From the NCBI RefSeq assembly GCF_902713615.1, contig NW_024055479.1:124001-188000 (forward strand): DNA of 64,000 bases, in the 5' to 3' direction. This document shows, in pieces, positions 8,801 through 54,837 of this stretch (positions within the stretch are counted from its first letter, which is position 1; each line of letters opens with the position of its first letter). The DNA comes from Scyliorhinus canicula (taxonomy: Eukaryota). The position numbers and the translations under genes are program-made. The notes under the pieces are model-generated. The model saw nothing but the letters and a program-made list of their open reading frames with translations. It was not told where the DNA came from and ran no database searches.

Positions 8801-9097
8801 TAATCATAACAATCTTTATTGTCAAAAATAGGCTTACATTAACACTGCTATGAAGTTACTGTGAGAAGCCCCTAGTCTCCATATTCCGAGCGCCTGTTCG
8901 GGTACACGGAGGGAGAATTTAGAATGTCCAATTCACCTAAGAGCACATCTTTTAGGACTTGTGGGAGGAAAGTGGAGCAACCGGAGGAAACCCACGCAGA
9001 CACGGAGAGAACGTGCAGACTCCGCACATACAGTGACCGAATCAGGAACCCTGGTGCCGTGAAGCAACAGTGCTAACCACTGTGCTACCTTCCCGCA
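8800..9097 (-). mobile_element. SINE with HE1-like head and family-B-like 3' tail
   Basis: Reverse complement matches the + copies at 29853-30150 and 45230-45515. Confidence 0.85.
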
Positions 9098-16254: not shown

Positions 16255-16560
16255 TAATAATAATACTAATCTTTATTAGTGTCACAAGTATATTTTCATT
16301 AACACTGCAATGAAGTTACTGTGAATATCTCTTAGTCGCCAAACCCCGGCGTTGGGGTACACTGAGGGAGAATTCAAAATGTCCAATGCACCTAACAAGT
16401 ATGTCTTTAGGGACTGTGGGAGAAAAGAGCACCCAGAGGAAACCCACACAGACACGAGGAGAATGTGCAGACTCCACACAGACAGTGACCCAAGTCGGGA
16501 ATCGAACCTGGGACCTTGCACAGTGACGCAACAATGCGAACCACTGTGCTACCGTGCCGA
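16255..16560 (-). mobile_element. SINE with HE1-like head and family-B-like tail
   Basis: Same structure as 8800-9097. Confidence 0.8.
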
Positions 16561-28200: not shown

Positions 28201-28919
28201 TTATATTCCGCAAAGTCCCGATATCCTGTGTTCCCAACACTAGTGAATGTTAGACAGCCGGTGGCCAATACAAACTAGCTGCAATTATTTGGATGCTGAA
28301 GGAGAACTTTGCTGATCGCCGGATCCCTTCTGATTCATTAATTTTTCTGTCCAATGCTGATGTCAATTTTATGTTTCTCTGTCCACTCACAATGCGATAA
28401 CGGGGAAAACGGAGTTCTTTTCCCGCTAATATTTACAGGACTGTCTTAATCTCAAGAGAATTTCGTGAAATGTCAGGAGAAATATTGTATAATGTGAGAA
28501 TTCCTCTTACCCACAGTCCCACATTGTACAGTGATAGGCACCCACACGGGAAATACAATCACTTTGTTCATCCCGTCATTTGGTTACAGAAACCGATAAC
28601 AATTCCTCTGGTAGATAATACTTTATTGTTGTAATGGGAAAGAGACCCAAGGTGGTCGAAATCAGACTGACAGACGATTCGTTCCCTGATACTATCATTG
28701 AATCTGTTTATGTTCACTCCCTTATATTGGAGTGTAGAAATAAAGGGGCTTAATTTACAATGGAATTAGTTTTTATAACCAAATATTCAGATGTAATTTT
28801 GCCATTAGGAAGAGGAGAGGTATTACAACGAATCAATTCAGACAAATAAATATTCCGATACAGATAAAATGTCAGTTTTAATAATAACCCTATAGTAAAT
28901 CTCTGAGTCCATTCTGTTG

Positions 28920-29016
28920 GGGGTGTGGAAGGCGGGACGTGGATCCAGTCGCCGCCTCCACCAGGGAATCAACAGGCGGCGCCTGGAAAGCCGCCCCCTT
29001 CTGCCGGGTATTTAAA
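28920..29016 (+). promoter_or_regulatory. Candidate VH promoter (GC-rich boxes plus TATA-like element)
   Basis: TATTTAAA at 29009-29016, about 90 nt before the leader ATG, preceded by GGGTGTGG and GGCGGG in a local GC-rich patch within AT-rich DNA. Function inferred from position only. Confidence 0.55.
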
Positions 29017-29107
29017 TGCCGCTCACTGGGACCCGAATCCAACAGTCCGGGAGCTGGTTTGTTCACTGAGTTCCTGACACAACCATTTCCCCCAAATGGC
29101 CAGAAGG

Positions 29108-29153
29108 ATGAGGTGGGCCATTTCTCTCAGTTTGTTGCTGACTTTCTTATCCC
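29108..29153 (+). CDS. IGHV: IgH leader exon 1 (signal peptide MRWAISLSLLLTFLS + 1 nt)
   Basis: ATG at 29108, 15 hydrophobic codons plus 1 nt, then donor GTGAGT at 29154. Joins in phase 1 to the acceptor TTTTTACAG|GT at 29282, giving R-V-Q-S before mature QVVLTQ. Confidence 0.95.
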
Positions 29154-29281
29154 GTGAGTAATTTTTATTGTCCAAGTCTCTCACTGTTACTGTCTCAGTG
29201 TTAGTCTCTCTCTGGAATGTTCCAGAGTCACCAATCATTTCACCAGCATTAATCCTCGGGCTTTTTGATATATTTTTACAG

Positions 29282-29646
29282 GTGTCCAGTCGCAGGTTGT
29301 GTTGACTCAGCCAGAGGCAGAGACCGGGCGTCCCGGAGGCTCCCTGAGACTGACTTGCAAAGCCAGCGGGTTCCGCGTAGGCGGCTTCAGCCTTCATTGG
29401 GTCCGATTCGTCCCCGGACAGGGTTTACAGTGGTTGCTTTACTATTATACTGCATCCAACAATTACTACGCCCCAGGGATTGAGAACCGATTTACTGCGT
29501 CCAAAGACCTTACGAAGAACATCTTCGCTTTGGACATACGGAATCTGAAGACCAAGACATCGCCATCTATTACTGTTCATGGCAGCCTACAAAATACTGG
29601 GGTGGCGAATACTGGGGACAAGGCACCATGGTGACAGTGACGGCAG
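29282..29646 (+). pseudogene. IGHV: Pre-joined VH-D-JH exon of an IgM heavy chain, frameshifted by a 1-nt deletion near 29554
   Basis: Reads [87 protein letters not shown], then after a one-base shift (ACC AA GAC) [30 protein letters not shown] and donor G|GTCAG at 29647. The exon is 365 nt where 366 is needed for phase 1/phase 1. No RSS lies between V and J. Confidence 0.93.
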
Positions 29647-29852
29647 GTCAGATTCTTGCATTTATTTATGCCTACTCACAAAGTTGTTGCCATTATTCCA
29701 ATTTTCTGGTTATGTTCCGAATTAAATAGTTTGTTGGCGAGCGGGCTCCTTGAATTCCATGTTGAATTTTAATTGTACCAGGCATTTGTTTTGGTTGGAA
29801 AAATATGCATAATAGAAGAAAAACAGCTGCGTCTCCATGAAACGTGTTTCAG

Positions 29853-30150
29853 CGCACGGTAGCACATTGGTTAGCACTATTGCTTCACAGCTCCAGGGTC
29901 CCAGGTTAGAGTCCCTGCTTGGGTCACTGTCTGTGTGGAGTGCACGTTCTCCCTGTGTCTGCGTGGGTTTCCTCCGAGTGGTCCGGTTTCCTCGCACAAG
30001 TCCCGAAAGACATGCTGTTAGGTAATGTGGACATTCTGAATTCTCCCCCTCTGTACCCAAACAGGCGCCGGAGTGTGGCGACTCCGGGCTTTTCACAGTA
30101 ACTTAAATGCAGTGCTAATGTAAGCCTACTTGTGACAATAAAGATTATTA
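29853..30150 (+). mobile_element. SINE with HE1-like head and family-B-like tail, about 200 nt into the J-C intron
   Basis: GCACGGTAGCACATTGGTTAGCAC...GGCTTTTCACAGTAACTT...GTGACAATAAAGATTATTA. Confidence 0.85.
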
Positions 30151-32004
30151 TTGACGTGATTTGGTATTTTTCTACGGTGGAGAAGATGTGACTGCGTTAC
30201 TTTGAATAAGTAAAATTTGTGGAAACATTTTGCGTTTCTGACTTGCTCATGCATTGTTTCAACTCCGTGAGATTGCGCGGTTAAACGTTAACTGATTGCA
30301 TGAAATACTTCAAGCACGATTGTAGGCAGAAAACAGGCAGACGTTAAAATGAAAAATTAACATTTTCAGATATGTTGGTGCATTTTTAAAAATTGTGATA
30401 ATTGCAGTTTAAATAAAGACAGGGTTTATGATGCTCGCTCAGAACATATTTTGTAACTGTGGTCACAAACTATTTAATTAACAAGTTCACCAAATGGAGA
30501 GTAAAATGAATGTCATTCAAACAGCTAGAATGAGCCAATATCTCTCCGTATTGAATAAAGGTGCGGTTAAATTAATATCATTATCATCAATCCCCTTTCA
30601 CAATGCTGCTGTGTACTGGGCACAAACAACATGAACGGAAAACTTCAAGTTGTAAGTATTTTTTTTATTATCCCTGCAAATATTTCAATAAGACATTCTG
30701 ATTCCAATCAGTGTTCAGTTTCACAAGCCATTTTGAAGTAATTGTTATATCCCAGGCTAAAACAGATAAATGAACGTTCGCATTTACTTACATAGGAGTT
30801 TTATATTGCATTTTGGCAATATATGCATCCGGTTATGATATTATTTGTGTGCAGCCGCAACTATATTATCCCATCAATTTTATTTGTACTTTGACAGTGA
30901 GGTAATTATAATTAACCTAATCCTAAACGGTTTTGTGAAGGAATTGTTAATAATGATGGTTAAATAGTTGGTGTATTTGCATATGGCTAGAGATTTGCAA
31001 ATAAAACAGGAAAGTGAGCGAATTATTTTAAATCAAAAGTCTGCCAGTAGCATCGAACCTGAAATCAATACCGTCTCCTATAACTGTGCTGCACACAGGA
31101 AAGAATCAGAGCTGAAATACTGATTATATCTGACCTTTATGGTTAGTTCTTTACTAAATATTACATTGAACAAGGAAATTGCGCCTTACTTTCTCGCAAA
31201 CGTTCTGAATGAATTGTTCCCAAGATTTAGATGCTTCAGTTTGGCTCTTCTCGAATTAATAATATATTTATTAACATATTTCCGGCAATTGTGTGAATTG
31301 CAGGTGTATTTTTGAAAAATTGCCCGAGTTATTAAATCCAGGTAGTACCGTTACCGCTCACAAACTGCGGATATATATAGGCCCTGGCAGTTTCTGATCA
31401 ATAAAGTTGCTGCCTGTAGGTTATAACACAGACATTTTTTAAATATTCACTCCTGTAATAATATATATAGTTACGATTTACGACAATATTTAAATATGAG
31501 AGTCTTGTTTTGCCAACCAGCTGATATTACAGCCCATAAACCGACCGTGCGAAGTGGCCCACTCAAAATTAGGAACTACTTAAAATATTCCACTCAAATG
31601 CATCATGTAAACCACTTACAGAGGATTAATTGAGGTTATAATACATGAACGTCTTTACGAATATTTTAGTGTTTACATGTTTGTCGGTAAAAAGGGCAGT
31701 TATAGGTATTGCCCATTTTAAATTCTTAAAATGTGATTAGATTTAAATAAAATGACATATATGTCTCAATATTTCCCTCTGTTAATTTTATTTGTATTAC
31801 GTAACATAGGTTAAGTGCCATACTAATTCAGTTTACCCCAATTATTTCACAAAGTATTAGGCAGAAACATATTTTGAAATGTCAAAATTATTTTTTATTA
31901 TTGAGTACAAATCTGTTAACAAGCAAATTAACTGTAACCATAATAACTCGAACTTATTCTACACACATGTGATCTCCTACAACTGAGTAATTTCAGTGAG
32001 CTCA

Positions 32005-32200
32005 TGGCCCCGGCCGTTAGGATTCACTCTTCCCGCCGGCGGCGCACCCCCTCCGGCGGCTTTCCCGACGGAGTGGGGTGGCTTAAATGGAAAATCCTAT
32101 TGGCAAGTGGCAGGAGGGGAGAATCCCCCCCGCCAACGAGCGGTGCGGCACCGAGCAAACGCTTCTCTTGGATGGGAAAAACCAGTCTCAGATCTCAACG
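32005..32200 (-). repeat. GC-rich short interspersed repeat (same family as 12047-12210)
   Basis: Abrupt GC-rich island in AT-rich intron DNA, similar in reverse orientation to 12047-12210. Confidence 0.55.
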
Positions 32201-32994
32201 GTTAGGAAGAATGTTTAATTGCATCCAAAATGAATTGAGAAAACAACACATATATTTCGTCAACTGTAAGATGCTCGGTAAGGAGCTTTGCCTTGATTTC
32301 TTTGTTAGCTACATTCCATTACGAAATTGTTATGTCAAACCTGTGGAGAATGAGTTTTGAATATGAATGCTTCCCGGTTTGTGTGTTGCTTCCCCTGTCA
32401 CTGCGTGTCTTTTAAGAACATCAAATTATCCCTAATCTGCAAAGCTTGATATGCTCATATTCAGGGAAACTAAATCTTTGTTTTTTCAAGACTGAATGTC
32501 AAAGGCGTTATTATTGTGGTAATGGATCATTGATCAAATAGAATCACACCGTTTGAATGAAATTGACAGACTGAACGTATTTATCTGCTGGAAACTCGGT
32601 TGTAGCACTGCTTGTGTCTGTTCAGTTCCATGCGCCTGGTCACTGTGTTGTACCAGGAACCTTGCTGACTGGTTGTAAACCTTCCGCTTCCTTCTCCTGT
32701 TTTTCAAGGCGTGCAATCGGATTAATTTCTTCAAAAAGTATGCATGATCAATGTGAAAGTTTGACTTCATATTTAATTGTATGCATCAGAAATCGGACTC
32801 CTGACAGACCGGGAAAATCACACACAATCGACAGCCTAGCAAAAGAGTTTAGTTCGATTTGTAACCAGTAATATTGGGACTGTTGAATTAGGCAATTTGA
32901 AGTGAATTTTACTCTACATTTAACTTTTGCTCCTAATGTTCTCTGAATGAGATGGTGCAGAAGGAGTGAACAGACGGCATGAAAAAGTATACAG

Positions 32995-33168
32995 AGGGCT
33001 GGTTTAGCACACTGGGCTAAATCGCTGGCTTTTAAAGCAGACCAAGGCAGGCCAGCAGCACGGTTCAATTCCCTACCAGCCTCCAATTAAAGGCGCCGGA
33101 ATGTGGCGACTAGGGGCTTTTCGCAGTAAGTTAATTGAAGCCTACTCGTGACAGTAAGCGATTTTCAT
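32995..33168 (+). mobile_element. SINE family B
   Basis: GGGCTGGTTTAGCACACTGGGCTAAATCGCTGGCTTTTAAAGCAGACC... Confidence 0.9.
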
Positions 33169-33184
33169 ATTGATCTAAGATTAC

Positions 33185-33790
33185 ATGGCAAGGCCAGCAT
33201 TTTTTGCAGTTTTCTAGTTTAGTTTCAGAAAGTGTCGTTGAATCCTATAGAGTCTATGGAATCCTTTCAGTGCAAAAGAAGGCCATTCGGACCATCGAAA
33301 GTGTAGTTACCCTCTTAAAGGGCACGTTACCTCGGCCGACTACGCGACTTATCCCCCTAACACCGTAGCCCCACCTAGCCTGCACATGGTTGGACTATGG
33401 TGGAACCCCGGAGCACCTGGAGGAGTCGCATTCTTAAACCGCTGAAACAATGTGTGTCAGTACACTCAAAGTAATGTTAGGAAGCGAATTGCATGATTAT
33501 CCCCAGGTAAGAGTAAAGAAATGATTATATAGTTCAAATCATGATAATTGTGTATTCAAGGAGAACTGAAGGTTACACTATCGTCAGTGGGAGCCATTCC
33601 ACTTTCAGCTGGTGGAGGGACGTGGGTTGGGAAGGAGCTTTGTCGAGTCGTTGTTGTAAGGGACACTGTGCACCGGAGGTAGAGAGAGTGAGTTTTTAAG
33701 GTGGTGGGTGTGGTGCGAATTTTGCTGGCGACATTGTTCTTGACAGCGTCGAATTTATTGAATGTTGTTGGATTGGCATTCATAGAGGCA
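33185..33790 (-). mobile_element. Decayed HE1-like SINE fragment followed by an L2/CR1-group LINE fragment
   Basis: 33245-33425 resembles the HE1 tail/body; 33556-33783 resembles 40960-41290 in reverse. Confidence 0.5.
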
Positions 33791-36214
33791 TATGGAATTT
33801 ATTCAATAGTTGTCCCCCTTTGTGTCTTCTCTAGATGATGGTCGGCTTTGATATAAAATTGTTGAGTTACTCCGGGAGTTGGGGGTTTGGTGGTGGAAGG
33901 AGGCGGAGAGACAGGACTTGGGGCGGGAGGGTATTCAGAGGCAAGAGAGTCAGGAGAGGTCATAACTTCATAATTGTCCTGTGCCTGACCTGAACGTCTT
34001 CTCCCCACATCATTAAACACATTTAATCAGCTTCAATCTCAATAAGTATGTTCGTAAACACAAATTCTCCCGTTACTCCTGTGAACTAATGCACTTTAAT
34101 TGATTTTAACAATCTTTCTAAAAAATGAACATGCATGCATTTTACTGAATTAATTATGTTTAGGCATTTGAGTACCAAATAATCATTCCATGAGAGCGAC
34201 CTGACTTTGAACGCGGTTTTATAATACTTTCAGGAAGTGAGAGCAATGCTCCAGCGAGCGGCGTCTGTTCTGGTCTGATAGGAAGCTGCAAGTTATTTTC
34301 ACTCCCGAAATAGAGAATGATTAGACGCCCATGCCAAATAACCAACATAAGAAACTTTTGGTTCAAATTATTATTTCATTCTATTCTTTGAAATTGTTCA
34401 CTGACAAAAATAACAGGATCGAGGTGCAAGTATCCCACTGGGCCACCATACAGAGTATAAAGCCACAAAACTACATTTCTGTCACATATTTCAAGTGCTG
34501 CATTTAGTCTGAAATCGGCTGTTTCATCATAAACCTAATTCCTTGTGTGCATTCGATTGACTCAGTTACCTCAGATTAATCAGATCCCTTTATTTTAACG
34601 TAAGTTTCCATTATTCCAAACAATATAATGATATCAAAGAGCTGCAAGGGAGTATTAAACATTTTCTCCCATCAAATGAGAAAGAATGTGTCCAATGAGT
34701 CCTACAGACTGGTAGAATTATGTCGTAGATAACTGAGTAATTCGGCTCATTATGCCCATTTTGACTCTAAAATAGTTCCAATTTGGACCCACAACTCGTA
34801 AATCTGTTAATTAATTGACATATCAAATCACTTTATTCATTCCAGATGCAGCGAACCGGGGCAGACACAATGATCTGGATGATCTTCTCATTTGCAGTAA
34901 CCACTCTATAATTCCAAAGTCAACACCTTCTGACTGGAGCAAAACACGTTCTGCATCACCCTAAATTTCCTAATTATTTTGTCAATTGTTTCCTTTCGAT
35001 AACCAGCAGAAACATTTTCTCCTCAACTATTATATTAACAATATCTCATCATTTTGAACATATCTCTCCAATAACCCCATAAGACACACGGTTAGAACGT
35101 GAACAAGTTAGCTGGTGTAACCTCTCTATAATATTGAACTCTCCCACACGTGATATCACCTTAGTACATCCTCTCCGTATTCTCCACAGGGACTTGACCA
35201 TTTCCCTAAAGTGGTGGTCAGAAGTTTTCAGAAGATAGCGCAGCCTGGTGAGTGCTTGAAAAACGTCATCATGAATTTCTCCTTGTCGGGGCTCCTATTT
35301 ACAAGACTTCCATTCGCTTTTCAAGCCACCTTAACAACCTTTCCTGCTGCTTTCAAAAACGTTGTCAATGTGCATCCCTCTAATTCTCCACCGTGACAAA
35401 AATTAGTAATCCTTGATATTCCATACTGTAGAGTGTTATTTCCGAATAACTCAGGTATCTGAATCAGCCACAAAACAGAAGTGCGAGTTGATCATATCAA
35501 CAGACTAGATGATTCCGTTCTTTTATCTATGTAACCCATTGACATATACTCGAATTATGACGTTTAATGAGTGCAAGCGTTGATGTATACACAAAATGTC
35601 TGTCCTGTGATCAAACAGAAACAGCTGGTAAAATAAATAAGAGGTAGAACTTAGGAAGTTAGATTGCTAAATGAAATAGACTATTTAAACAATGGCGTTT
35701 TATATTTTCAACGCATGGAATTGTGCTCAATTAGTAGTATTAATTGAGTTGTCGGGCTGGGGTGCGGGGCGACCAAACTTGAGATAGACATTCAGTAGAT
35801 CTGTGTAGAGAATGTATGGGAGAGCACAACTCTTTTTCAGAAGGAAATAGATAAACTAGATTAAATGACTATTCACACAAAAATTCAGTTCCAGGTATTA
35901 ACGTTTGTAAAATTATCCCTCGCAACGCCAATGTCAAATGTACATTTATATGTGAAAGGAGTCATCGACCAGTTATTTCAAATATCCATTACTGTCATGA
36001 GAACAAAGAAAATTAGGATGAAATCTGGTGGAGGTGTTTTGTACAACAGAAAGGGTTTCTTCTTACTGGAATTCAAGAAGTTATTTCCCCAAATCAGATG
36101 TTGGTCTATAAAATATATTTTGTTTAAATAAACATGGAAACATTTAAGGGAGAAAGGATTGCAATTTATAAACGCTTGGTTGTTAGGACCGGATATGGCC
36201 TGTCAAAAAGTAGA

Positions 36215-37680
36215 TACATAGATAGATAGAACATTACAGTGCAGTACAGGCCCTTCGCCCCACAATGTTGCGACGAGCTGTGAAACCCCTCTAATGCCCA
36301 TGTACACTATTCCCTTATCATCCATACGTCTATCCAATGACCATTTGAATGCCCTTAGCGTTGGCGAATCCACTATTGTTGCAGGCAGGCCATTCCACGC
36401 CCTTACTACTCTCTGAGTAAAGAACCTACCTTTAACATCTGTCTTATATTTATCTCCCCTCAATTTAAAGCTATGTTCCCTCGTGCTGCACACTACCAGC
36501 CCAGGAAAAAGGCTCTCACTGTGCATCCTTTCTAATCCTCTGATCATCTTGTGTGCCTCAATTAAGTCACCTCTTAATCTTCTTCTCTCTAACGAAATCA
36601 GCCTCAAGTCCCTCAGCCTTCCCTCATAAGATCTTCCCTCCATACCAGGCAACATTATGGTGAATCTCCTCTGCACCCTTTCCAATGCTTCCACATCCTT
36701 CCTATAATGCAGCGACCAGAATTGCACGCAATATCCAAATGCGGCTGCACCAGAGTTTTGTACAGCTGCAACTTGACCTCATGGCTCCGAAACTCAACCC
36801 CTCTACCAATGAAAGCTAACACACCGCACGTCTTCTGAACAACCCTCTCAACCTGGGTGGCAACTTTCAGGGATTTATGTACATGGACACCGAGATCTCT
36901 CTGCTCATCCACACTACCAAGAATCTTCCCATTAACCCAGTATTCTGTCTTCCTGTTTTTCCTTCCAAAATGAATCACCTCACACGTTTATGCATTAAGC
37001 TCCAGTTGCCATCTCTCAGCCCAGCTCTGCAGCTTATCTATGTCCCTCGGTAACTTGTAACATCCTTCCGCACTGTCCACTACACCACCGACTTTAGTGG
37101 CATCTGCAAATTTACTCACCCATCCTTCTACGACCTCCTCCAGGTAATTTATAAAAATGACAAACGGCAGTGGCCCCAAAACAGATCCTTGTGGTACACC
37201 ACTAGTAACTGGACTACAGTCTGAACATTTCCCATAAACCACCACCCTTTGTCTTCTTACAGCTAGCCATTTTCTGATCCATACTGCTAAATCACCCTGA
37301 ATCCCATGCCGCCGTATTTTCTGCAATAGCCTACAGTGGGGAACCTTATCAAACGCTTTACTGAAATCCATATACACCACATCAACTGCTTTACCCTCAT
37401 CCACCTGTTTGGTCACTTTCTCAAAGAACTCAATACGGTTTGTGAGGCACGACCTACCCTTCAGAAAACCGTGTTGACTATCTCTAATCAAATTATTCCT
37501 TTCCAGATTATTATACATCCTATCTCTTATAAAACTTTCCAAGACTTTGCCCACAACAGAAGTAAGGCTCACTGGTCTATAGTTACCGAGGTTGTCTCTA
37601 CTCCCCTCCTTGAACAAGGCAACAACATTTGCTATCTTCCCAGTCTTCTGGCACTATTCCTGTAGACAAAGATGACTCAG
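36215..37680 (-). mobile_element. CR1 LINE 3' part (RT to tail), antisense in the J-C intron
   Basis: GNYRPVSLTSVVGK, YMDFSKAFDKVPH, GVPQGSVLGP, FADATK, GRFFTQRVVRAWNGLP on the minus strand. Confidence 0.92.
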
Positions 37681-38841
37681 TGGAATGCGTAATAGTTTGG
37701 TAAAATTGAACTTTTGAAAGGAAGATCAAAGTCATGATCAACTGAATAGCTTTTTTCCCCAGACATTATATTTCATAATTTATAATGCTGTTATTCTTAA
37801 AGAGCATGCAGTGATTTGTTTTAAACATGTGATAACTTGTATGACTATAAGTAACATCTATAATGAAGAAAAGTAAACCGATCCAAAAAATTTTTTAAAA
37901 TCCTCTAAATTCAATAGTGAGCTGCAATTGTATGACCACTGCAATGTAGTGCGACGCCCCAAACATTTTCCTCGACCTTTACAAGAGATGACCTACCCCG
38001 AGTCATATAATGAGAAGTTATGGCAGTTCCCCACAAGCTTTGTCCAAGAGGAAGGTTTAAGGCAGCTTTTAAAATGGAATGACGGATGAAATGTAATATC
38101 AAGAATGGGAGAATCCTGTGCAGATGTCAGGAGGCTGGTAGTAAATGTATGTAGGAGGTGTCCAATGGACAAAATGTGGAACAGTCTAACTCTAAAATAT
38201 TTAATACTGAAATATAAAATATTTGGGGAGTTAAGTGAGTTTCTCCACAGCAAACAAGATCTGAAGAAAATCGACGATTCAATGTTCCGAAGTTGCTCGA
38301 GAAAGCAACCTCATGGTCAGAATGCACCTTTCGGAATCATGGCCTTCATTTTCTGCAAGACTGGAATTATTTGAAGGTGTTTTACATTTGGTCTCACAAC
38401 CCACTTTAGCTCCAAGGGCACTGCAGGTCATGATTAGAAAATGTTGGAATTACTTTATCTTGTACTCAGGTTTAGAGTTGTAGGGCTATTTTATAAGCAC
38501 TCCCTGCCAAGCACCGTTTGAATCGGAGTTATTATTTTGTGAGGGCCATGGGGCTGGAGTGGCAAATTTCAATAAGGCCAGTTTCCAGTGCAACAACCTG
38601 ACGACGAGAAAACACTTTGTTCTTCACGAAAATGTAAATATTTTTGAAATGGTAGTTGCAATATTTGGAAAATGTTCTGCTCTTCTATTTTAATCTAACG
38701 AAGTCGACGTCATTCAGCTAAAATCAACATTTTAAAAATTGTGTCAGAGGCAGAGAAAGTGAACATGGGAAGAACAATTCATAATGGTACTGATGGAAAC
38801 TCAAATGCGGATGTACAGATTACTGTCAAAATAATGGAATA

Positions 38842-39068
38842 GGGCAGCACGGTGGCACAGGAGTTAGCATTGCTGCCTCACGTCGCCGAGGTCCCCGATT
38901 CGATTCCGGCTCTGGGTCACTGCCCGTGTGGAGTTTACACATTCTCCCCGTGTTGGCGTGGGTGTCACCCCCACAACCCAAAAATGTTCAGGGAAGGTGG
39001 ATTGGCCACGCTAAATTGCCCCTCATGTGGAAAAAATGAAGTGGGTAATCTAAATTTATTTTTAAAAA
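38842..39068 (+). mobile_element. Short HE1-related SINE just upstream of CH1
   Basis: GGGCAGCACGGTGGCACAGGAGTTAGC...CCCCCACAACCCAAA...GGATTGGCCACGCTAAATTGCCC; same subfamily as 49390-49592. Confidence 0.8.
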
Positions 39069-39168
39069 TTGAATAAATGTATAACTATAACCTAATTTTA
39101 AGTTGTTTGGTTACGAATTAAAAGCAAACAATTGGATCTGACATGTTCAATCCGTCTTTCTTTTCCAG

Positions 39169-39468
39169 CGACGCCGTCTCAACCCACTCTCTACAACCTG
39201 GCCCCCTCCTGTCAGCAACACAACACCGACGGCTCCGTGACCTACGGCTGTTTGGCGATGGACTACTCCCCAAAAATCAGCAGCCTTACCTGGAAGAAAG
39301 ATGGGCAGCCGATCACCACTGGATTGAAGACTTATCCGGCAGTGAGAAACATAAAGGGAACCTACACCCTGAGCAGCCAGTTAACCATCCCTGAGTCAGA
39401 GGGGGCATGCAGCAAAATCAGCTGTGAGGTTCGACACAACGGCTCAGACAAGAGCATTGGAATGACAT
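39169..39468 (+). CDS. IGHM: IgM heavy chain CH1 exon
   Basis: Acceptor TTTCTTTTCCAG, 300 nt open: [57 protein letters not shown]...SSQLTI...ISCEVRH, donor GTAAGT. C1-set Cys/Trp/Cys present; close to the shark mu CH1 I recall. Confidence 0.96.
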
Positions 39469-39678: not shown

Positions 39679-39993
39679 GTCGTAAAAATGACAAACCTCC
39701 AAATCTTCTCCTCACTGTGAGTTCCAATGAAGAAATCACACGCACTAAATTTGCAACCATCGTCTGTTCAATCATCGATTTCCGTCCAAAGTCAATGGCG
39801 GTGAAGTGGTTGAAGAATGGACAACCCATGGGTTCAGGAATTCTCACCTCTCCCGCCTGTGAAGTGAACGAGAACTTCTCGGCGAGCAGTCGGCTGACAG
39901 TCTCCGCTGGGGAATGGTTCAGCAAAGCGGTCTATACCTGCCAGGTCACTCATAAAGGGCTCACACAAAGTCGGAATATCGGCACATCTGAAG
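39679..39993 (+). CDS. IGHM: IgM heavy chain CH2 exon
   Basis: Acceptor TTTTTGAAG, 315 nt open: (C)[47 protein letters not shown]...[22 protein letters not shown], donor GTAAGA. Confidence 0.95.
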
Positions 39994-41863: not shown

Positions 41864-42172
41864 AGCCTGCCCCTTGCACTGATGTCTCAGTAAAAATACT
41901 GCCTCCGTCAATAGAACAGGTCTTACTGGAGGCGACTGTAACCTTAACCTGCATCATTTCGAATACTCCTTATGGAGTCAACGTGTCCTGGAGTGAAGCG
42001 AAGAAGCCGCTGAAATCAGAGATTGCTGAACAGCCTGGGGCAGATACTGGGAGTGTGGTGAGCAAATTAAACATCTCGACACAAGCCTGGCTGAGTGGGG
42101 CTGTGTTTGACTGTGTGGCGAGCCACCAGGATCTGCCAACGCCCTTAAAAAAATCCATCCACAAAGAAGAAG
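41864..42172 (+). CDS. IGHM: IgM heavy chain CH3 exon
   Basis: Acceptor TTCACAG, 309 nt open: [43 protein letters not shown]...[32 protein letters not shown], donor GTGAGA. Confidence 0.96.
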
Positions 42173-44429: not shown

Positions 44430-47400
44430 CATAGAAACGTACATAGAAAATAGAAGCAGGAGGGGGCCATTTGGCCCTTCGAGCCAGCTACCCCATTCAT
44501 TGTGATCATGACTGATCATCAAGTTCAATACCCTGATCCCGCCTTACCCCACATCACTTTGCCCCAAGAGCTATATCTAATAACATCTTGAAATTACACA
44601 ACGATTTGGCCTCAACTACCTTCTGCGGTAGTGAATTCCACAGATTCAGCACACTCTGGGTGATTAAATGTTTCCTCACCTCAGTCCTCAGAGGTTTATC
44701 CCTTATCCTCAAACTATGATCCCTAGTTCTGGACTCGTGCAACATCGGGAACTTTCTTTTACAAATCTGCACTGTCAAATATTGTGTAGGTTTCTATGCG
44801 ATACCCTGTCACTCTTCTAACCTCCATTGAATCTAATCCTAACCGACTTAACTCTCTCCTCGTATGACATCGCCATCCCAGCAATGATGTCGGTGAACCT
44901 TTGCTGCACTGCTCCATAGCAAGATCATCCTTGCTCAGATAAGGACACCAACACGGCAAACAATACTCCAAGTTTGGCCTCACCAAGGCCCTAAAGAATG
45001 TCAGTAAATCATCTGTACTCCTGTACTCAAATCCTTTCCCTATGAAGGCCAACATAGCATTTGCCTTCTTTACTGCCTCCTGTACCTGCGGGCTTACTTT
45101 CAGCGACTGATAATGGGTCTAGAATTTGCATCTCTGCCGATGGCAAGGTGACTGGTCAATAATTCTCTTTTCTATTTACATCCCTATGTAAGTAATGGTG
45201 TTAGATTAGCTATCATCTAACCTGGAAATGGGTGGCACGGTAGCATAGTGGTTAGCACTGCTTTGTCACAGCGCCAGGATCTCAGGTTCGATTCTTGGCT
45301 TTGGTCACTGTCTGGAAGTTCTCATCGTGTTTGCGTGGGTTTCCTCCGGATTCCTTACACAAGTCCTGAAAGACGTGCTTGTTAGGTGAATTGGAAATTC
45401 TGAATTCTCCCTCTGTGTAACGGAACAGGCACTGGAGTGTGGCGACTAGGTGCTTTTCGCAGTAACTTAATTGCAGTGTTAATGTAAGCCTACTTGTGAC
45501 ACTAATAAAAGATTTTATGATAATTATTATTTTTTTAAAACTGTTCCAGAGACAATTGTATATTGAAAGGTGACAACCAATACACCTATCACTTCTAGGG
45601 TCACTTCCTTCAACATTCTCGTATATACATTATCAGGTCCGGTGTCTATATGGACCATCAATCCTATCAATTGACCTAAAACCATTTATCTACTAATATT
45701 AATATTCTTCAGTTCCTCCCTCCCACCAGACCCTGTGTTCCCCAAAATATCTGGTATGTTATTTCTGTCCCCCGTTGTGAATGCAGAACCAATGTATTCA
45801 TTTAGTTGGCAGCCAGTCCTTTGTTCCCAATTATAAATCTCTCTGTTTCTGACTATAAGGGGATTACATTTATCTTCACCAATCTTTTTCGCGTCACATA
45901 CCTGTCGAACGTTTTACAGACAGTGTGTATATTCCCTGTAAACTTACTCTCGTCCTCTGTTAAGCGCTTCTGAATCAAACCGTTGGTTCCCTTTTACGGA
46001 ATTCTAAACTGCTCCTGTTGTTTTTTCCTGGCCAATTTTTATGCAACTTCCTCAGATCTAATACTGTCACTGATTCCATTGTACGCCACCGTTTGGTCAT
46101 CTTTCTCCTTTTAGTTTACGCCAGACAGGAGTAACGGATTGTTGCAACCACCCATACATCTTAGATTATTTGCCATTTCCGATACACCGTCATCCCTTTA
46201 CGTAATGTTTCCCAATATCTTATAGCTAACTGGCACCTCATACCATCCACGTTTCGTTCATTAAAGTTCAGGACCCTATTCTCAAACTCAACTACGTCAC
46301 TCTCCATCCAGATTCAAAATTCTATCATTTTATGGTCGCGCATCCCCACGGCGTCTCGCACAACTGTATTTCAAATTATTCCTTTCACGTTACACAACAT
46401 CCATTCTGGAATTATCTCCCCTCCCGTTGGTGGTTCAACGTTTTGGTTCAGAAAACCATCACGGATATACTCCAGGAATTCCTCCTCTACAGTACGATTG
46501 TCCTTTTTGATCCTGTTCGTAGATTTCTTTGCCTGTCACTTTTCTTATTCCCCTGACTGTCGTTAGTTCGTGTTCCTGATTCCCCCTTCTCTAACTACTT
46601 GCATATATTCCCACACCCTTGTCATTTTCGTTTCAGCCCTCCCCAACCACTCAGAAAATGCTCCCCCAAGGACAGTTTGTCTTGGTCCCACCTCCTGTTC
46701 CAGCTCCGAATTCCACAACATCTTAAACCTTCCCACTCGCGCCATATCATCAGCCATTCATTCATCCTATATATCCTGATATTTCGACGGTGACAAGCAT
46801 ATGGCACTAGTATTGATCCTGAGCTCACCATCTTTCAAATGCTAGTTCTCAACTTTTTACGTAACCACCTATATTTTGATTTTTAGGCCCTCATCCGTTT
46901 TTGTACCTGTGTGGTTTGTGTCAATATGTACCATGATCACTAGCTGTTGATCCACAATGTTCTCTAAATGCTCCAAGACATTGTTGACCCGAGCACCAGG
47001 GAGGCAATACCTTGCTGAATTCGCGCGTTTGCGGCCACAGAAATGCCTACCTATTGCCTTCCCTTGAAAGGCAGAATCGCCGATAGCTATTGCACTTCCA
47101 CACTTCTACCTGCTCCTCTATGCAGCGGAGCCAACTGACGAGTAACGGATTTGGCTTTTGCCATGTTACCACAGAGGTAATTCTCCTCAACAGTATCTAA
47201 AGTGGTATCTCAGTTTTTCAGTGGAATGGCCACAGAATGAACTACCTGTCTAGTCCCTTTGCTCTTTATGTTGGTTACCCAATCCGTTCCTGCCCCTGGA
47301 GTGTGTGCTTGCGGTGTGACGACCTCTCTATTGGTGCTATCCACTTCACTCTCCGCCTTAAGGATGCACCACAGTGTCCCCAGCCGCCTCTTGGTCTCGG

Positions 47401-48179: not shown

Positions 48180-48571
48180 ATCCCAACCCGCGGGAACCGT
48201 CCGTCTCTGTCCTCCTGCCCTCGGCTGAAGACGTCTCCGCCCAGAGATTCGTCTCCCTCAGCTGCTTAGTGAGAGGTTTCTCCCCCCGAGAGATCTTCGT
48301 CAAGTGGACCGTCAATGACAAGCCGGTGAATCCCGGGAACTACAAGAACACCGAGGTGATGGCGGAGAACGGCAATAGCTCCTTCTTCATGTACAGCCTG
48401 TTATCCATTGCAGCGGAGGAGTGGGCCAGCGGCGCTTCTTACTCCTGTGTGGTGGGACATGAAGCCATCCCCTTGAAGATCATCAACAGAACGGTTGATA
48501 AATCCAGCGGTAAACCCAGTTTTGTGAACATTTCCCTCGCTCTGATGGACACCGTTAATTCATGTCACTGA
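48180..48571 (+). CDS. IGHM: IgM heavy chain CH4 exon plus secretory tailpiece
   Basis: Acceptor TTTTCTGCAG; [43 protein letters not shown]...[23 protein letters not shown], then tail [20 protein letters not shown] with NIS sequon and penultimate Cys. Internal donor G|GTAAAC at 48509/48510 serves the membrane form. Confidence 0.97.
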
Positions 48572-48599: not shown

Positions 48600-48615
48600 A
48601 ATAAAATACAATAAA
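48600..48615 (+). terminator. Poly(A) signals of the secreted IgM transcript
   Basis: Two AATAAA hexamers (48600-48605, 48610-48615) about 30 nt after the secretory stop codon. Confidence 0.85.
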
Positions 48616-54709: not shown

Positions 54710-54837
54710 ACATTAGAGGCCACATCTGGATTGAAGACGATGGGGATGATAATGGTAATATCGGGACAACCGCTTCCGCATTTATCACTCTGTTTGTCTT
54801 CAGCATATTCTATAGCACTGCAGTGACTCTGGTGAAG
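54710..54837 (+). CDS. IGHM: IgM transmembrane exon TM1
   Basis: Acceptor CTTTCCCATCTCCGTAG, phase 1 start; DIRGHIWIEDDGDDNGNIGTTASAFITLFVFSIFYSTAVTLVK (acidic spacer plus CART-like TM helix with FYS); phase 0 donor GTGAGA. Confidence 0.95.

What the first reader, a model, noticed from the sequence alone, without database searches (positions are those of the whole stretch)
29282..29646. Germline-joined VDJ IgM heavy-chain gene
Seen: V FR3 (YYC at 29568-29576) runs straight through a 36-nt junction into JH ([11 protein letters not shown] at 29613-29645). There are no heptamer/nonamer signals or V-D/D-J spacers, while the 128-nt leader intron and 9.5-kb J-C intron remain, which excludes a processed retrocopy. 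Known: cartilaginous fish carry cluster-type IgH loci, and partly or fully pre-joined clusters occur in horn shark, skate and nurse shark (IgM1gj). Inference: this is a RAG-type rearrangement fixed in the germline that hard-wires one specificity. Whether this particular gene has been described cannot be told from the sequence.
Basis: partly seen in the sequence, partly recalled or inferred. Interest (0 to 1): 0.8.

Follow-up and report, generated by a model that had tools for sequence, protein, structure and literature searches.

The report
Germline-joined shark IgM heavy-chain gene
This is a real, complete and transcribed shark antibody (IgM) heavy-chain gene whose V, D and J pieces are already fused in inherited DNA; such genes have been known in sharks since the 1980s, so it is a new example, not a new kind.

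Summary
One exon (29282-29646) runs from V framework 1 through YYC and a 36-nt junction into JH. It has no recombination signals, a 128-nt leader intron and a 9,522-nt J-C intron. Downstream lie four Cmu exons, a secretory tail and a membrane exon.

Contigs from four public runs all carry one extra A behind 29553. These runs are two DNA samples of this species, one RNA sample and one DNA sample of a sister species. With that A, the secreted coding sequence is 579 codons with no stop and GT-AG introns, so the frameshift is most likely an assembly error.

An RNA contig matches the CDR3/J region exactly and continues into Cmu1 at 39169. RNA-like runs from six studies hold 65-87% of the exon's words.

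The sister species has the same joined gene in frame (dN/dS 0.16, p=0.004), so the join is inherited, old and under constraint.

It has four C domains, unlike nurse-shark IgM1gj. Earlier notes of this scan (unchecked) report at least five other germline-joined IgM clusters elsewhere in this genome.

Verdict: new member of a known kind, modest interest.

The parts
29009..29017 (+). TATA-like box (TATTTAAAT) of the V promoter
   Evidence: It is conserved in position in bamboo-shark and whale-shark VH promoters. The RNA contig starts at 29055, downstream of it. No exact octamer ATGCAAAT lies nearby.
29096..29153 (+). Leader exon. The first in-frame ATG is at 29096; the ATG conserved in other sharks is at 29108.
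   Evidence: An RNA contig joins 29153 to 29282 (skips 128 nt, GT..AG).
29154..29281 (+). Leader intron, 128 nt
   Evidence: the splice is seen in the RNA contig.
29282..29646 (+). Germline-joined VDJ exon: V to 29576, junction 29577-29612, J motif from 29613
   Evidence: Single contigs in two DNA samples, one RNA sample and the sister species span 29325-29646 and beyond.
29553..29554 (+). Site of a one-base deficit in the assembly (AA where reads have AAA); it causes an apparent frameshift
   Evidence: 'Put in behind 29553: A' is shown at full depth in X1, X2, X16 and X11.
29577..29612 (+). 36-nt junction (CDR3, [12 protein letters not shown]). It contains the D-like core CTGGGGTGGC.
   Evidence: The same 10-nt core is in the whale-shark joined VDJ, L003. 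The first 20 nt or so could not be assigned to a D segment.
29647..39168 (+). J-C intron, 9,522 nt, with a SINE at 29853-30152 and no tandem array
   Evidence: The first ~60 nt are homologous to the J-flanking intron of an unjoined cluster.
39169..39468 (+). Cmu1 exon
   Evidence: C1-set E 4.4e-14. The RNA contig's run-on beyond 29646 equals 39169-39198 exactly.
39679..39993 (+). Cmu2 exon
   Evidence: C1-set E 1.2e-18; AG/GT sites and in frame.
41864..42172 (+). Cmu3 exon
   Evidence: C1-set E 2.1e-9; AG/GT sites and in frame.
48180..48571 (+). Cmu4 exon with secretory tail (..[20 protein letters not shown], stop 48569-48571). An internal donor for the membrane form is at 48509/48510.
   Evidence: C1-set E 5.2e-22. 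AATAAA occurs at 48600 and 48610.
54710..54837 (+). Membrane exon TM1
   Evidence: It is in frame from the internal Cmu4 donor and encodes an acidic linker plus a hydrophobic span. TM2 was not settled.

Best explanation
This is an intact IgM heavy-chain minicluster of a shark whose V, D and J segments were fused in the germline.

Shown: one promoter drives a leader exon and a ready-made VDJ exon. That exon is spliced to Cmu1 of the same cluster. With the base that all reads add, the secreted form is a 579-codon open frame and the membrane form is also in frame.

Inferred: the roughly 1 kb that separates V, D1, D2 and J in ordinary clusters was removed by RAG-type recombination in a germ cell of an ancestor of this species and its sister species.

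Inferred: the gene needs no somatic rearrangement. Any B cell that activates the cluster makes one invariant heavy-chain V domain (CDR3 [12 protein letters not shown]). By analogy with skate and nurse-shark joined genes, it would act as an early or innate-like antibody of preset specificity.

The frameshift in the window is most likely an error of the assembly.
For: Anatomy and absence of RSS.

Inherited join: a 560-nt contig covers 29325-29850 in DNA runs X1 (2024 study) and X2 (2019 study), with 1 and 0 mismatches. A 538-nt contig in sister-species DNA (X11) covers the same span with 23 point differences and the same layout.

Frame: the extra A behind 29553 appears in all four runs at full depth. 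With it the CDS is 1,740 nt with no stop and all introns are GT-AG.

Transcription and splicing: RNA contigs join 29153 to 29282. A 389-nt contig covers 29325-29646 with 0 mismatches and continues with the exact first 30 nt of Cmu1 at 39169. RNA-like runs of six studies hold 0.65-0.87 of the exon's words, while other runs of the same studies hold about 0.

Constraint: against the sister species there are 7 synonymous and 4 replacement changes, dN/dS 0.16, Fisher p=0.004. Intron divergence is 5.9%.

Homology of both flanks to an unjoined cluster: window 28733-29579 matches the promoter-to-V-end of L001, and 29607-29708 matches the L001 J plus intron.

Mechanism precedent: PMC2193156. Known class: PMC4279169, PMC5192425.
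Against: The tissue of origin of the DNA runs is not known to me, and one of them may be the sample the window was assembled from. 'RNA' is a guess of the index for X16; its spliced contigs are what show it is RNA. Contigs cannot give expression level, stage or cell type. The 30 nt of Cmu1 may be shared by other clusters. No protein evidence exists. The first ~20 nt of the junction match no D segment I could obtain, so no P or N nucleotides or hairpin footprints could be read. The sister-species contig could in principle be a close paralog rather than the ortholog. A private frameshift allele in the assembled individual is not excluded.
Confidence: 0.85

Rival explanations
1. Transcribed pseudogene: the one-base deletion at 29553 is real, at least in the assembled individual, and the joined gene makes no heavy chain there.
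For: The window as assembled is frameshifted. Joined pseudogenes are known in sharks (PMC2435157 lists pseudogene groups).
Against: All four runs laid, including two DNA samples of this species and the sister species, carry the extra A at full depth. The rest of the gene is flawless. dN/dS is 0.16.
Confidence: 0.06
2. Somatic rearrangement or misassembly: the joined exon came from B-cell DNA or chimeric reads, and the germline locus is unjoined.
For: Genome assemblies made from blood or spleen can in principle capture rearranged alleles. The tissue source is unknown to me.
Against: An identical junction is found in two DNA samples and in an RNA contig of another study. The same joined layout is found in another species with 23 scattered substitutions. 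No DNA contig leaves the V end into an RSS for this gene's own unique sequence (table 7). A clonal somatic junction would not recur across individuals and species.
Confidence: 0.02
3. The join arose not by RAG cutting in germ cells but by gene conversion or recombination with a reverse-transcribed rearranged transcript, or the gene is a relic of a never-split V gene.
For: No junctional footprints (P or N nucleotides) could be read here. The 5' block 28898-29383 is shared at 95% or more with tens of paralogs, which shows conversion or recent duplication in this family.
Against: Both introns are kept, and the sequence immediately 3' of J is homologous to the J-flanking intron of unjoined clusters. 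The junction contains a D-like core also seen in another shark's VDJ. Its V is closer to an unjoined V (71.5% nt to L001) than to the joined genes of other species (65.7-67.8%). That argues for a lineage-specific join, as shown for nurse-shark light chains (PMC2193156).
Confidence: 0.08

Closest known systems
Germline-joined (VDJ) IgM clusters of horn shark, skates and other cartilaginous fish (reviews PMC4279169, PMC5192425; clearnose skate remark in PMC2435157)
   Same: A minicluster with its own promoter. V, D and J are fused in one exon without RSS, and the leader and J-C introns are kept. The four Cmu exons are ordinary, and the gene is transcribed.
   Different: This is a specific gene of another species with its own CDR3. 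Here conservation of the join in a sister species under purifying selection is shown. Developmental timing is not known here.
Nurse shark IgM1gj (described in PMC4279169, PMC5192425)
   Same: A fully germline-joined VDJ and an invariant heavy-chain V domain.
   Different: IgM1gj lacks Cmu2 and has three C domains. This gene has a Cmu2 exon with good splice sites, in frame. Neonatal predominance and pairing with a joined sigma-2 light chain were not testable.
Germline-joined nurse-shark NS4 light-chain genes made by RAG-like activity in germ cells (Lee et al. 2000, PMC2193156)
   Same: The proposed origin is the same: recombination of a split cluster in the germline, after which expression is independent of somatic RAG.
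   Different: Those are VJ light-chain genes with hairpin/P-nucleotide footprints documented against close unjoined paralogs. Here no parental paralog was available, so the footprints are unread.
Joined VH genes fetched here: whale shark VDJ-joined exon (L003) and brownbanded bamboo shark VD-joined cluster (L002)
   Same: VH of the same family, no RSS after V; L003 shares the D-like core CTGGGGTGGC and the J.
   Different: Only 64-67% amino-acid identity in V, less than to an unjoined bamboo-shark V (70%). These are therefore probably independent joins, not orthologs.

Membership tests
Chondrichthyan IgM heavy-chain minicluster | Leader exon plus V-set exon, followed on the same strand by four C1-set exons | tested here: met
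   Pfam V-set and 4x C1-set. Exon map with GT-AG sites. It is the only V and only C set in 64 kb.
Chondrichthyan IgM heavy-chain minicluster | Secretory tail with penultimate Cys and N-glycosylation site, and an alternative membrane exon reached from an internal Cmu4 donor | tested here: met
   The tail ..[14 protein letters not shown], a donor at 48509/48510, and TM1 at 54710-54837 in frame. The tail is 85-95% identical to shark Cmu4 proteins.
Germline-joined VDJ cluster | V, D and J contiguous in one exon with no heptamer/nonamer signals | tested here: met
   By contrast, the unjoined L001 has V-CACAGTG, a D1 flanked by heptamers, and CACTGTG-J spread over about 1 kb.
Germline-joined VDJ cluster | The join is present in inherited (non-lymphocyte) DNA | tested here: inconclusive
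   The tissue of the DNA runs is unknown. However, the same junction is in two DNA samples and an RNA sample of another study, and the joined layout is in a sister species. Only germline inheritance explains this.
Germline-joined VDJ cluster | Introns retained (not a retrocopy) | tested here: met
   A 128-nt leader intron and a 9,522-nt J-C intron, both spliced in RNA contigs.
Germline-joined VDJ cluster | Open reading frame through the join | tested here: met
   Not met in the assembly, but met in every read-derived contig because of the extra A behind 29553.
IgM1gj type (nurse shark) | Constant region of three domains, Cmu2 missing | tested here: not met
   The Cmu2 exon 39679-39993 is present, with AG/GT sites and in frame. 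Its use in transcripts was not checked.
IgM1gj type (nurse shark) | Predominant expression in neonates; preferred pairing with a germline-joined sigma-2 light chain | not testable with these tools

The most novel reading that the evidence does not exclude
The gene encodes a dedicated invariant heavy chain that has co-evolved with one particular (perhaps also germline-joined) light chain. Its V domain carries F where 9 of 10 shark VH comparators have the interface glutamine (WVRQ to WVRF, Kabat 39), and K in the otherwise invariant TED motif. Both residues are kept in the sister species. This would make it a hard-wired, innate-like receptor maintained by selection for a long time rather than a by-product of stray RAG activity.
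Probability: 0.25. Interest if true: 0.5.

Novelty: new member of a known kind. Interest (0 to 1): 0.3.

Why it matters
Germline-joined antibody genes show that RAG has reshaped the germline of cartilaginous fish. They also show that an adaptive receptor can revert to an inherited, fixed-specificity one. This example is useful because it is complete, transcribed, spliced, conserved in a second species and under purifying selection. It is therefore a good candidate for asking what a hard-wired shark antibody binds and when it is used. It also flags a one-base assembly error that would make annotators call a working gene a pseudogene. It does not change what is known about the class.

Tried and rejected
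1. Species and closest published gene. Protein searches with the V piece and the Cmu4 exon gave at best 70% (V) and 85-95% (Cmu4) identity to bamboo-shark, cloudy-catshark, horn-shark and unnamed proteins. No near-identical database protein turned up, and the species could not be fixed. 'Catshark' comes only from earlier scan notes and is unverified.

2. A look-up of the 95% Cmu4 protein returned no DNA.

3. Assigning the junction to D1/D2. Only a 10-nt D-like core could be matched, via whale shark L003. The D segments of bamboo-shark L001 do not match, and no paralog of this genome was available.

4. Octamer ATGCAAAT near the promoter: none.

5. Switch-like tandem repeats in the J-C intron, reported by other notes for other clusters: none here.

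6. Literature search for a description of joined IgM genes in catsharks found only reviews. The library lacks most subscription papers, so 'undescribed' is not established.

7. Retrocopy, somatic-join and misassembly readings were rejected (see rivals).

8. TM2 was not settled; there are two weak candidates.

Full report
OBSERVATION

- A leader exon (29096-29153) is followed by a 128-nt GT..AG intron.
- The next exon (29282-29646) starts with [30 protein letters not shown] and contains YYC at 29568-29576.
- A 36-nt junction follows, then [11 protein letters not shown] at 29613-29645, and the exon ends at a donor g|gtcaga.
- The V part matches Pfam V-set (E 2.6e-8).
- Four downstream exons on the same strand match C1-set (E 4e-14 to 5e-22).
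- tblastn of each domain against the window finds no second V and no second C set, so the window holds one cluster.
- No exact heptamer lies in 29282-29900, and no heptamer-spacer-nonamer lies near the cluster.

For contrast, an unjoined bamboo-shark cluster (L001) has the V end followed by CACAGTG, a D1 flanked by heptamers, and CACTGTG directly before J. These are spread over about 1 kb.

THE FRAMESHIFT

As assembled, the exon is not one open frame. The V frame from 29284 reads ..[15 protein letters not shown].. and stops near 29632. YYC-CDR3-J lies in the next frame.

I laid contigs of four runs on 28250-29850. All four show 'put in behind 29553: A' at full depth: 13.7/13.7, 7.03/7.03, 23.3/23.3 and 42/42. 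The real sequence is therefore ACC AAA GAC, not ACC AA GAC.

With that base, the leader+VDJ reads ..[40 protein letters not shown]. The whole secreted coding sequence is 1,740 nt (579 codons plus the stop) with no internal stop, and every intron is GT-AG. The six exons are:
- leader, 29096-29153
- VDJ, 29282-29646
- Cmu1, 39169-39468
- Cmu2, 39679-39993
- Cmu3, 41864-42172
- Cmu4, 48180-48571

The membrane form is also in frame. It runs from an internal Cmu4 donor at 48509/48510 to TM1 at 54710-54837. AATAAA signals follow the secretory stop.

The frameshift is most likely a homopolymer error of the assembly. A private allele of the assembled individual is not strictly excluded, because I cannot tell which run, if any, is that individual.

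IS THE JOIN INHERITED?

The index finds the stretch in DNA-type runs of two samples from two studies (2019 and 2024). It also finds it, at about half the word share, in runs of a second organism.

Laid on the window:
- X1 and X2 each give one 560-nt contig spanning 29325-29850, that is, V through the junction and J into the intron, with 1 and 0 mismatches.
- The second organism (X11) gives one 538-nt contig over the same span. It has 23 substitutions, the extra A and one intronic 1-nt deletion, and the same contiguous V-D-J-intron layout.
- An RNA contig of a further study (X16) has the junction with 0 mismatches.

A somatic junction cannot recur identically in different individuals. Nor can it appear, with scattered substitutions, in another species. 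The tissue of the DNA samples is unknown to me, so the classical test (non-lymphoid DNA) is formally open, but the inference is strong.

TRANSCRIPTION

In X16 one contig joins 29153 to 29282 (skips 128 nt, GT..AG). A 389-nt contig covers 29325-29646 and runs on with 30 letters that equal 39169-39198, directly after the acceptor ttttccag. So the VDJ exon is spliced to Cmu1.

RNA-like runs of six studies hold 0.65-0.87 of the exon's sampled 31-mers. Words across the assembly error cannot match, so the ceiling is about 0.9. Other runs of the same studies hold about 0, as expected for tissue-restricted RNA rather than DNA.

Contigs give no level, stage or cell type.

CONSTRAINT

Against the second organism, the 107 covered codons differ by 7 synonymous and 4 replacement changes. 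The replacements are R51S in CDR1, T97S in FR3, and K124T and Y125H in CDR3. Nei-Gojobori dN/dS is 0.16 (Fisher p=0.004). The adjoining intron differs at 12 of 204 sites. CDR3 length and frame are kept. The numbers are small, but they point to purifying selection on the joined exon since the two species split.

HOW IT AROSE (INFERRED)

Window 28733-29579 aligns to the promoter, leader, intron and V of the unjoined L001 (71.5% identity). Window 29607-29708 aligns to the L001 J plus the start of its J-C intron. The TATA-like box and the initiator ATG (29108) are conserved across sharks.

The gene therefore looks like an ordinary cluster from which exactly the V-to-J intervening DNA has been removed. 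This is what RAG-type deletional joining does, and what Lee et al. 2000 (PMC2193156) showed for nurse-shark light-chain genes.

The junction contains CTGGGGTGGC, which is also present in a whale-shark joined VDJ (L003) and so is probably D-derived. The preceding ~20 nt could not be assigned. Without the parental paralog, no P or N footprints can be read.

The V is closer to the unjoined L001 than to the joined genes L002 and L003. The joins in different sharks therefore look independent.

HOW IT LIKELY WORKS

Shown: the gene has a promoter, an intact frame, and splicing to Cmu1.

Inferred: because no rearrangement is needed, any cell that opens this cluster makes one fixed heavy-chain V domain, as secreted or membrane IgM with four C domains. 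By analogy with skate and nurse-shark joined genes (PMC4279169, PMC5192425, PMC2193156), I consider early-life or innate-like use the most likely role (about 50%). This is not tested here.

COMPARISON WITH WHAT IS KNOWN

Partly and fully joined IgH clusters are a long-known feature of cartilaginous fish (PMC4279169, PMC5192425; PMC2435157 mentions many joined VDJ in clearnose skate).

The gene is not of the IgM1gj type, because it has a Cmu2 exon.

Earlier notes of this scan call the genome a catshark. They report at least five other germline-joined IgM clusters on other pieces of it, one of them with the same follow-up verdict. These are unchecked leads, but they fit. There the promoter-to-FR1 block has about 30 times the depth of the unique part, and a paralog contig continues from the Cys codon into D-like sequence without a heptamer.

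I found no paper on joined IgM genes of catsharks in the held library. That does not prove there is none.

UNUSUAL DETAIL

Against ten shark VH sequences, the V differs at five positions that 9-10 of them share. These include WVRQ to WVRF (Kabat Q39, the VH-VL interface glutamine by general antibody knowledge) and TED to TKD. All five are unchanged in the second organism. This is the basis of the 'co-evolved dedicated pair' reading, which is speculative.

VERDICT

The apparent pseudogene is an assembly artefact. The gene is an intact, expressed, conserved germline-joined four-domain IgM gene. It is a new member of a known kind, with interest about 0.3.

Noticed in passing
window 28898-29383: In DNA runs the contigs over the promoter, leader, leader intron and FR1 have about 30 times the word depth of the unique contig that starts at 29325, with loose ends at 28876-28890. 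This 5' block is therefore shared at 95% or more by tens of paralogous VH genes, through homogenisation or recent duplication.
   Followed up: partly
window 29554-29576 (contig of run X2): A paralog contig matches the FR3 end and then continues, right after the Cys codon, with D1-like sequence (..ATACTACAGCAGT..) and no heptamer. This is probably a VD-joined paralog elsewhere in this genome.
   Followed up: no
L002 10448-10520 (Chiloscyllium punctatum): This is a VD-joined cluster. The V runs into D1-like GTATACTACAGTAATTGGG, followed by a diverged RSS (CACTGCA, 12-nt spacer, ACAAAAACC). J follows about 400 nt later, behind CACTGTG.
   Followed up: partly
L003 10465-10545 (Rhincodon typus): This is a fully VDJ-joined exon in whale shark with the same D-like core CTGGGGTGGC. 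Its J motif reads WGQE instead of WGQG.
   Followed up: partly
window 29096-29110: An in-frame ATG lies four codons upstream of the ATG that aligns with the start codon of other shark VH genes. The high-depth paralog contigs differ at 29099 (G>A).
   Followed up: no
window 29405-29410, 29551-29556 (protein residues 62 and 111): The VH has F in place of the near-universal interface Q (WVRF), and K in the TED motif. Both are kept in the sister species.
   Followed up: partly
window 29853-30152 and at least 10 other places (e.g. 8806-9089, 16262-16557, 45235-45505): A SINE-like repeat of about 300 nt is scattered over the window on both strands. Much of 1-28000 is LINE/reverse-transcriptase debris.
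   Followed up: no
protein P0019: A protein labelled Salmonella enterica is 97% identical to the shark Cmu4 tail over a quarter of the query. This is almost certainly contamination of that bacterial assembly.
   Followed up: no
window 29647-39168: Unlike other IgM clusters of this genome described in earlier scan notes, this J-C intron has no switch-like tandem array (TRF found nothing).
   Followed up: yes
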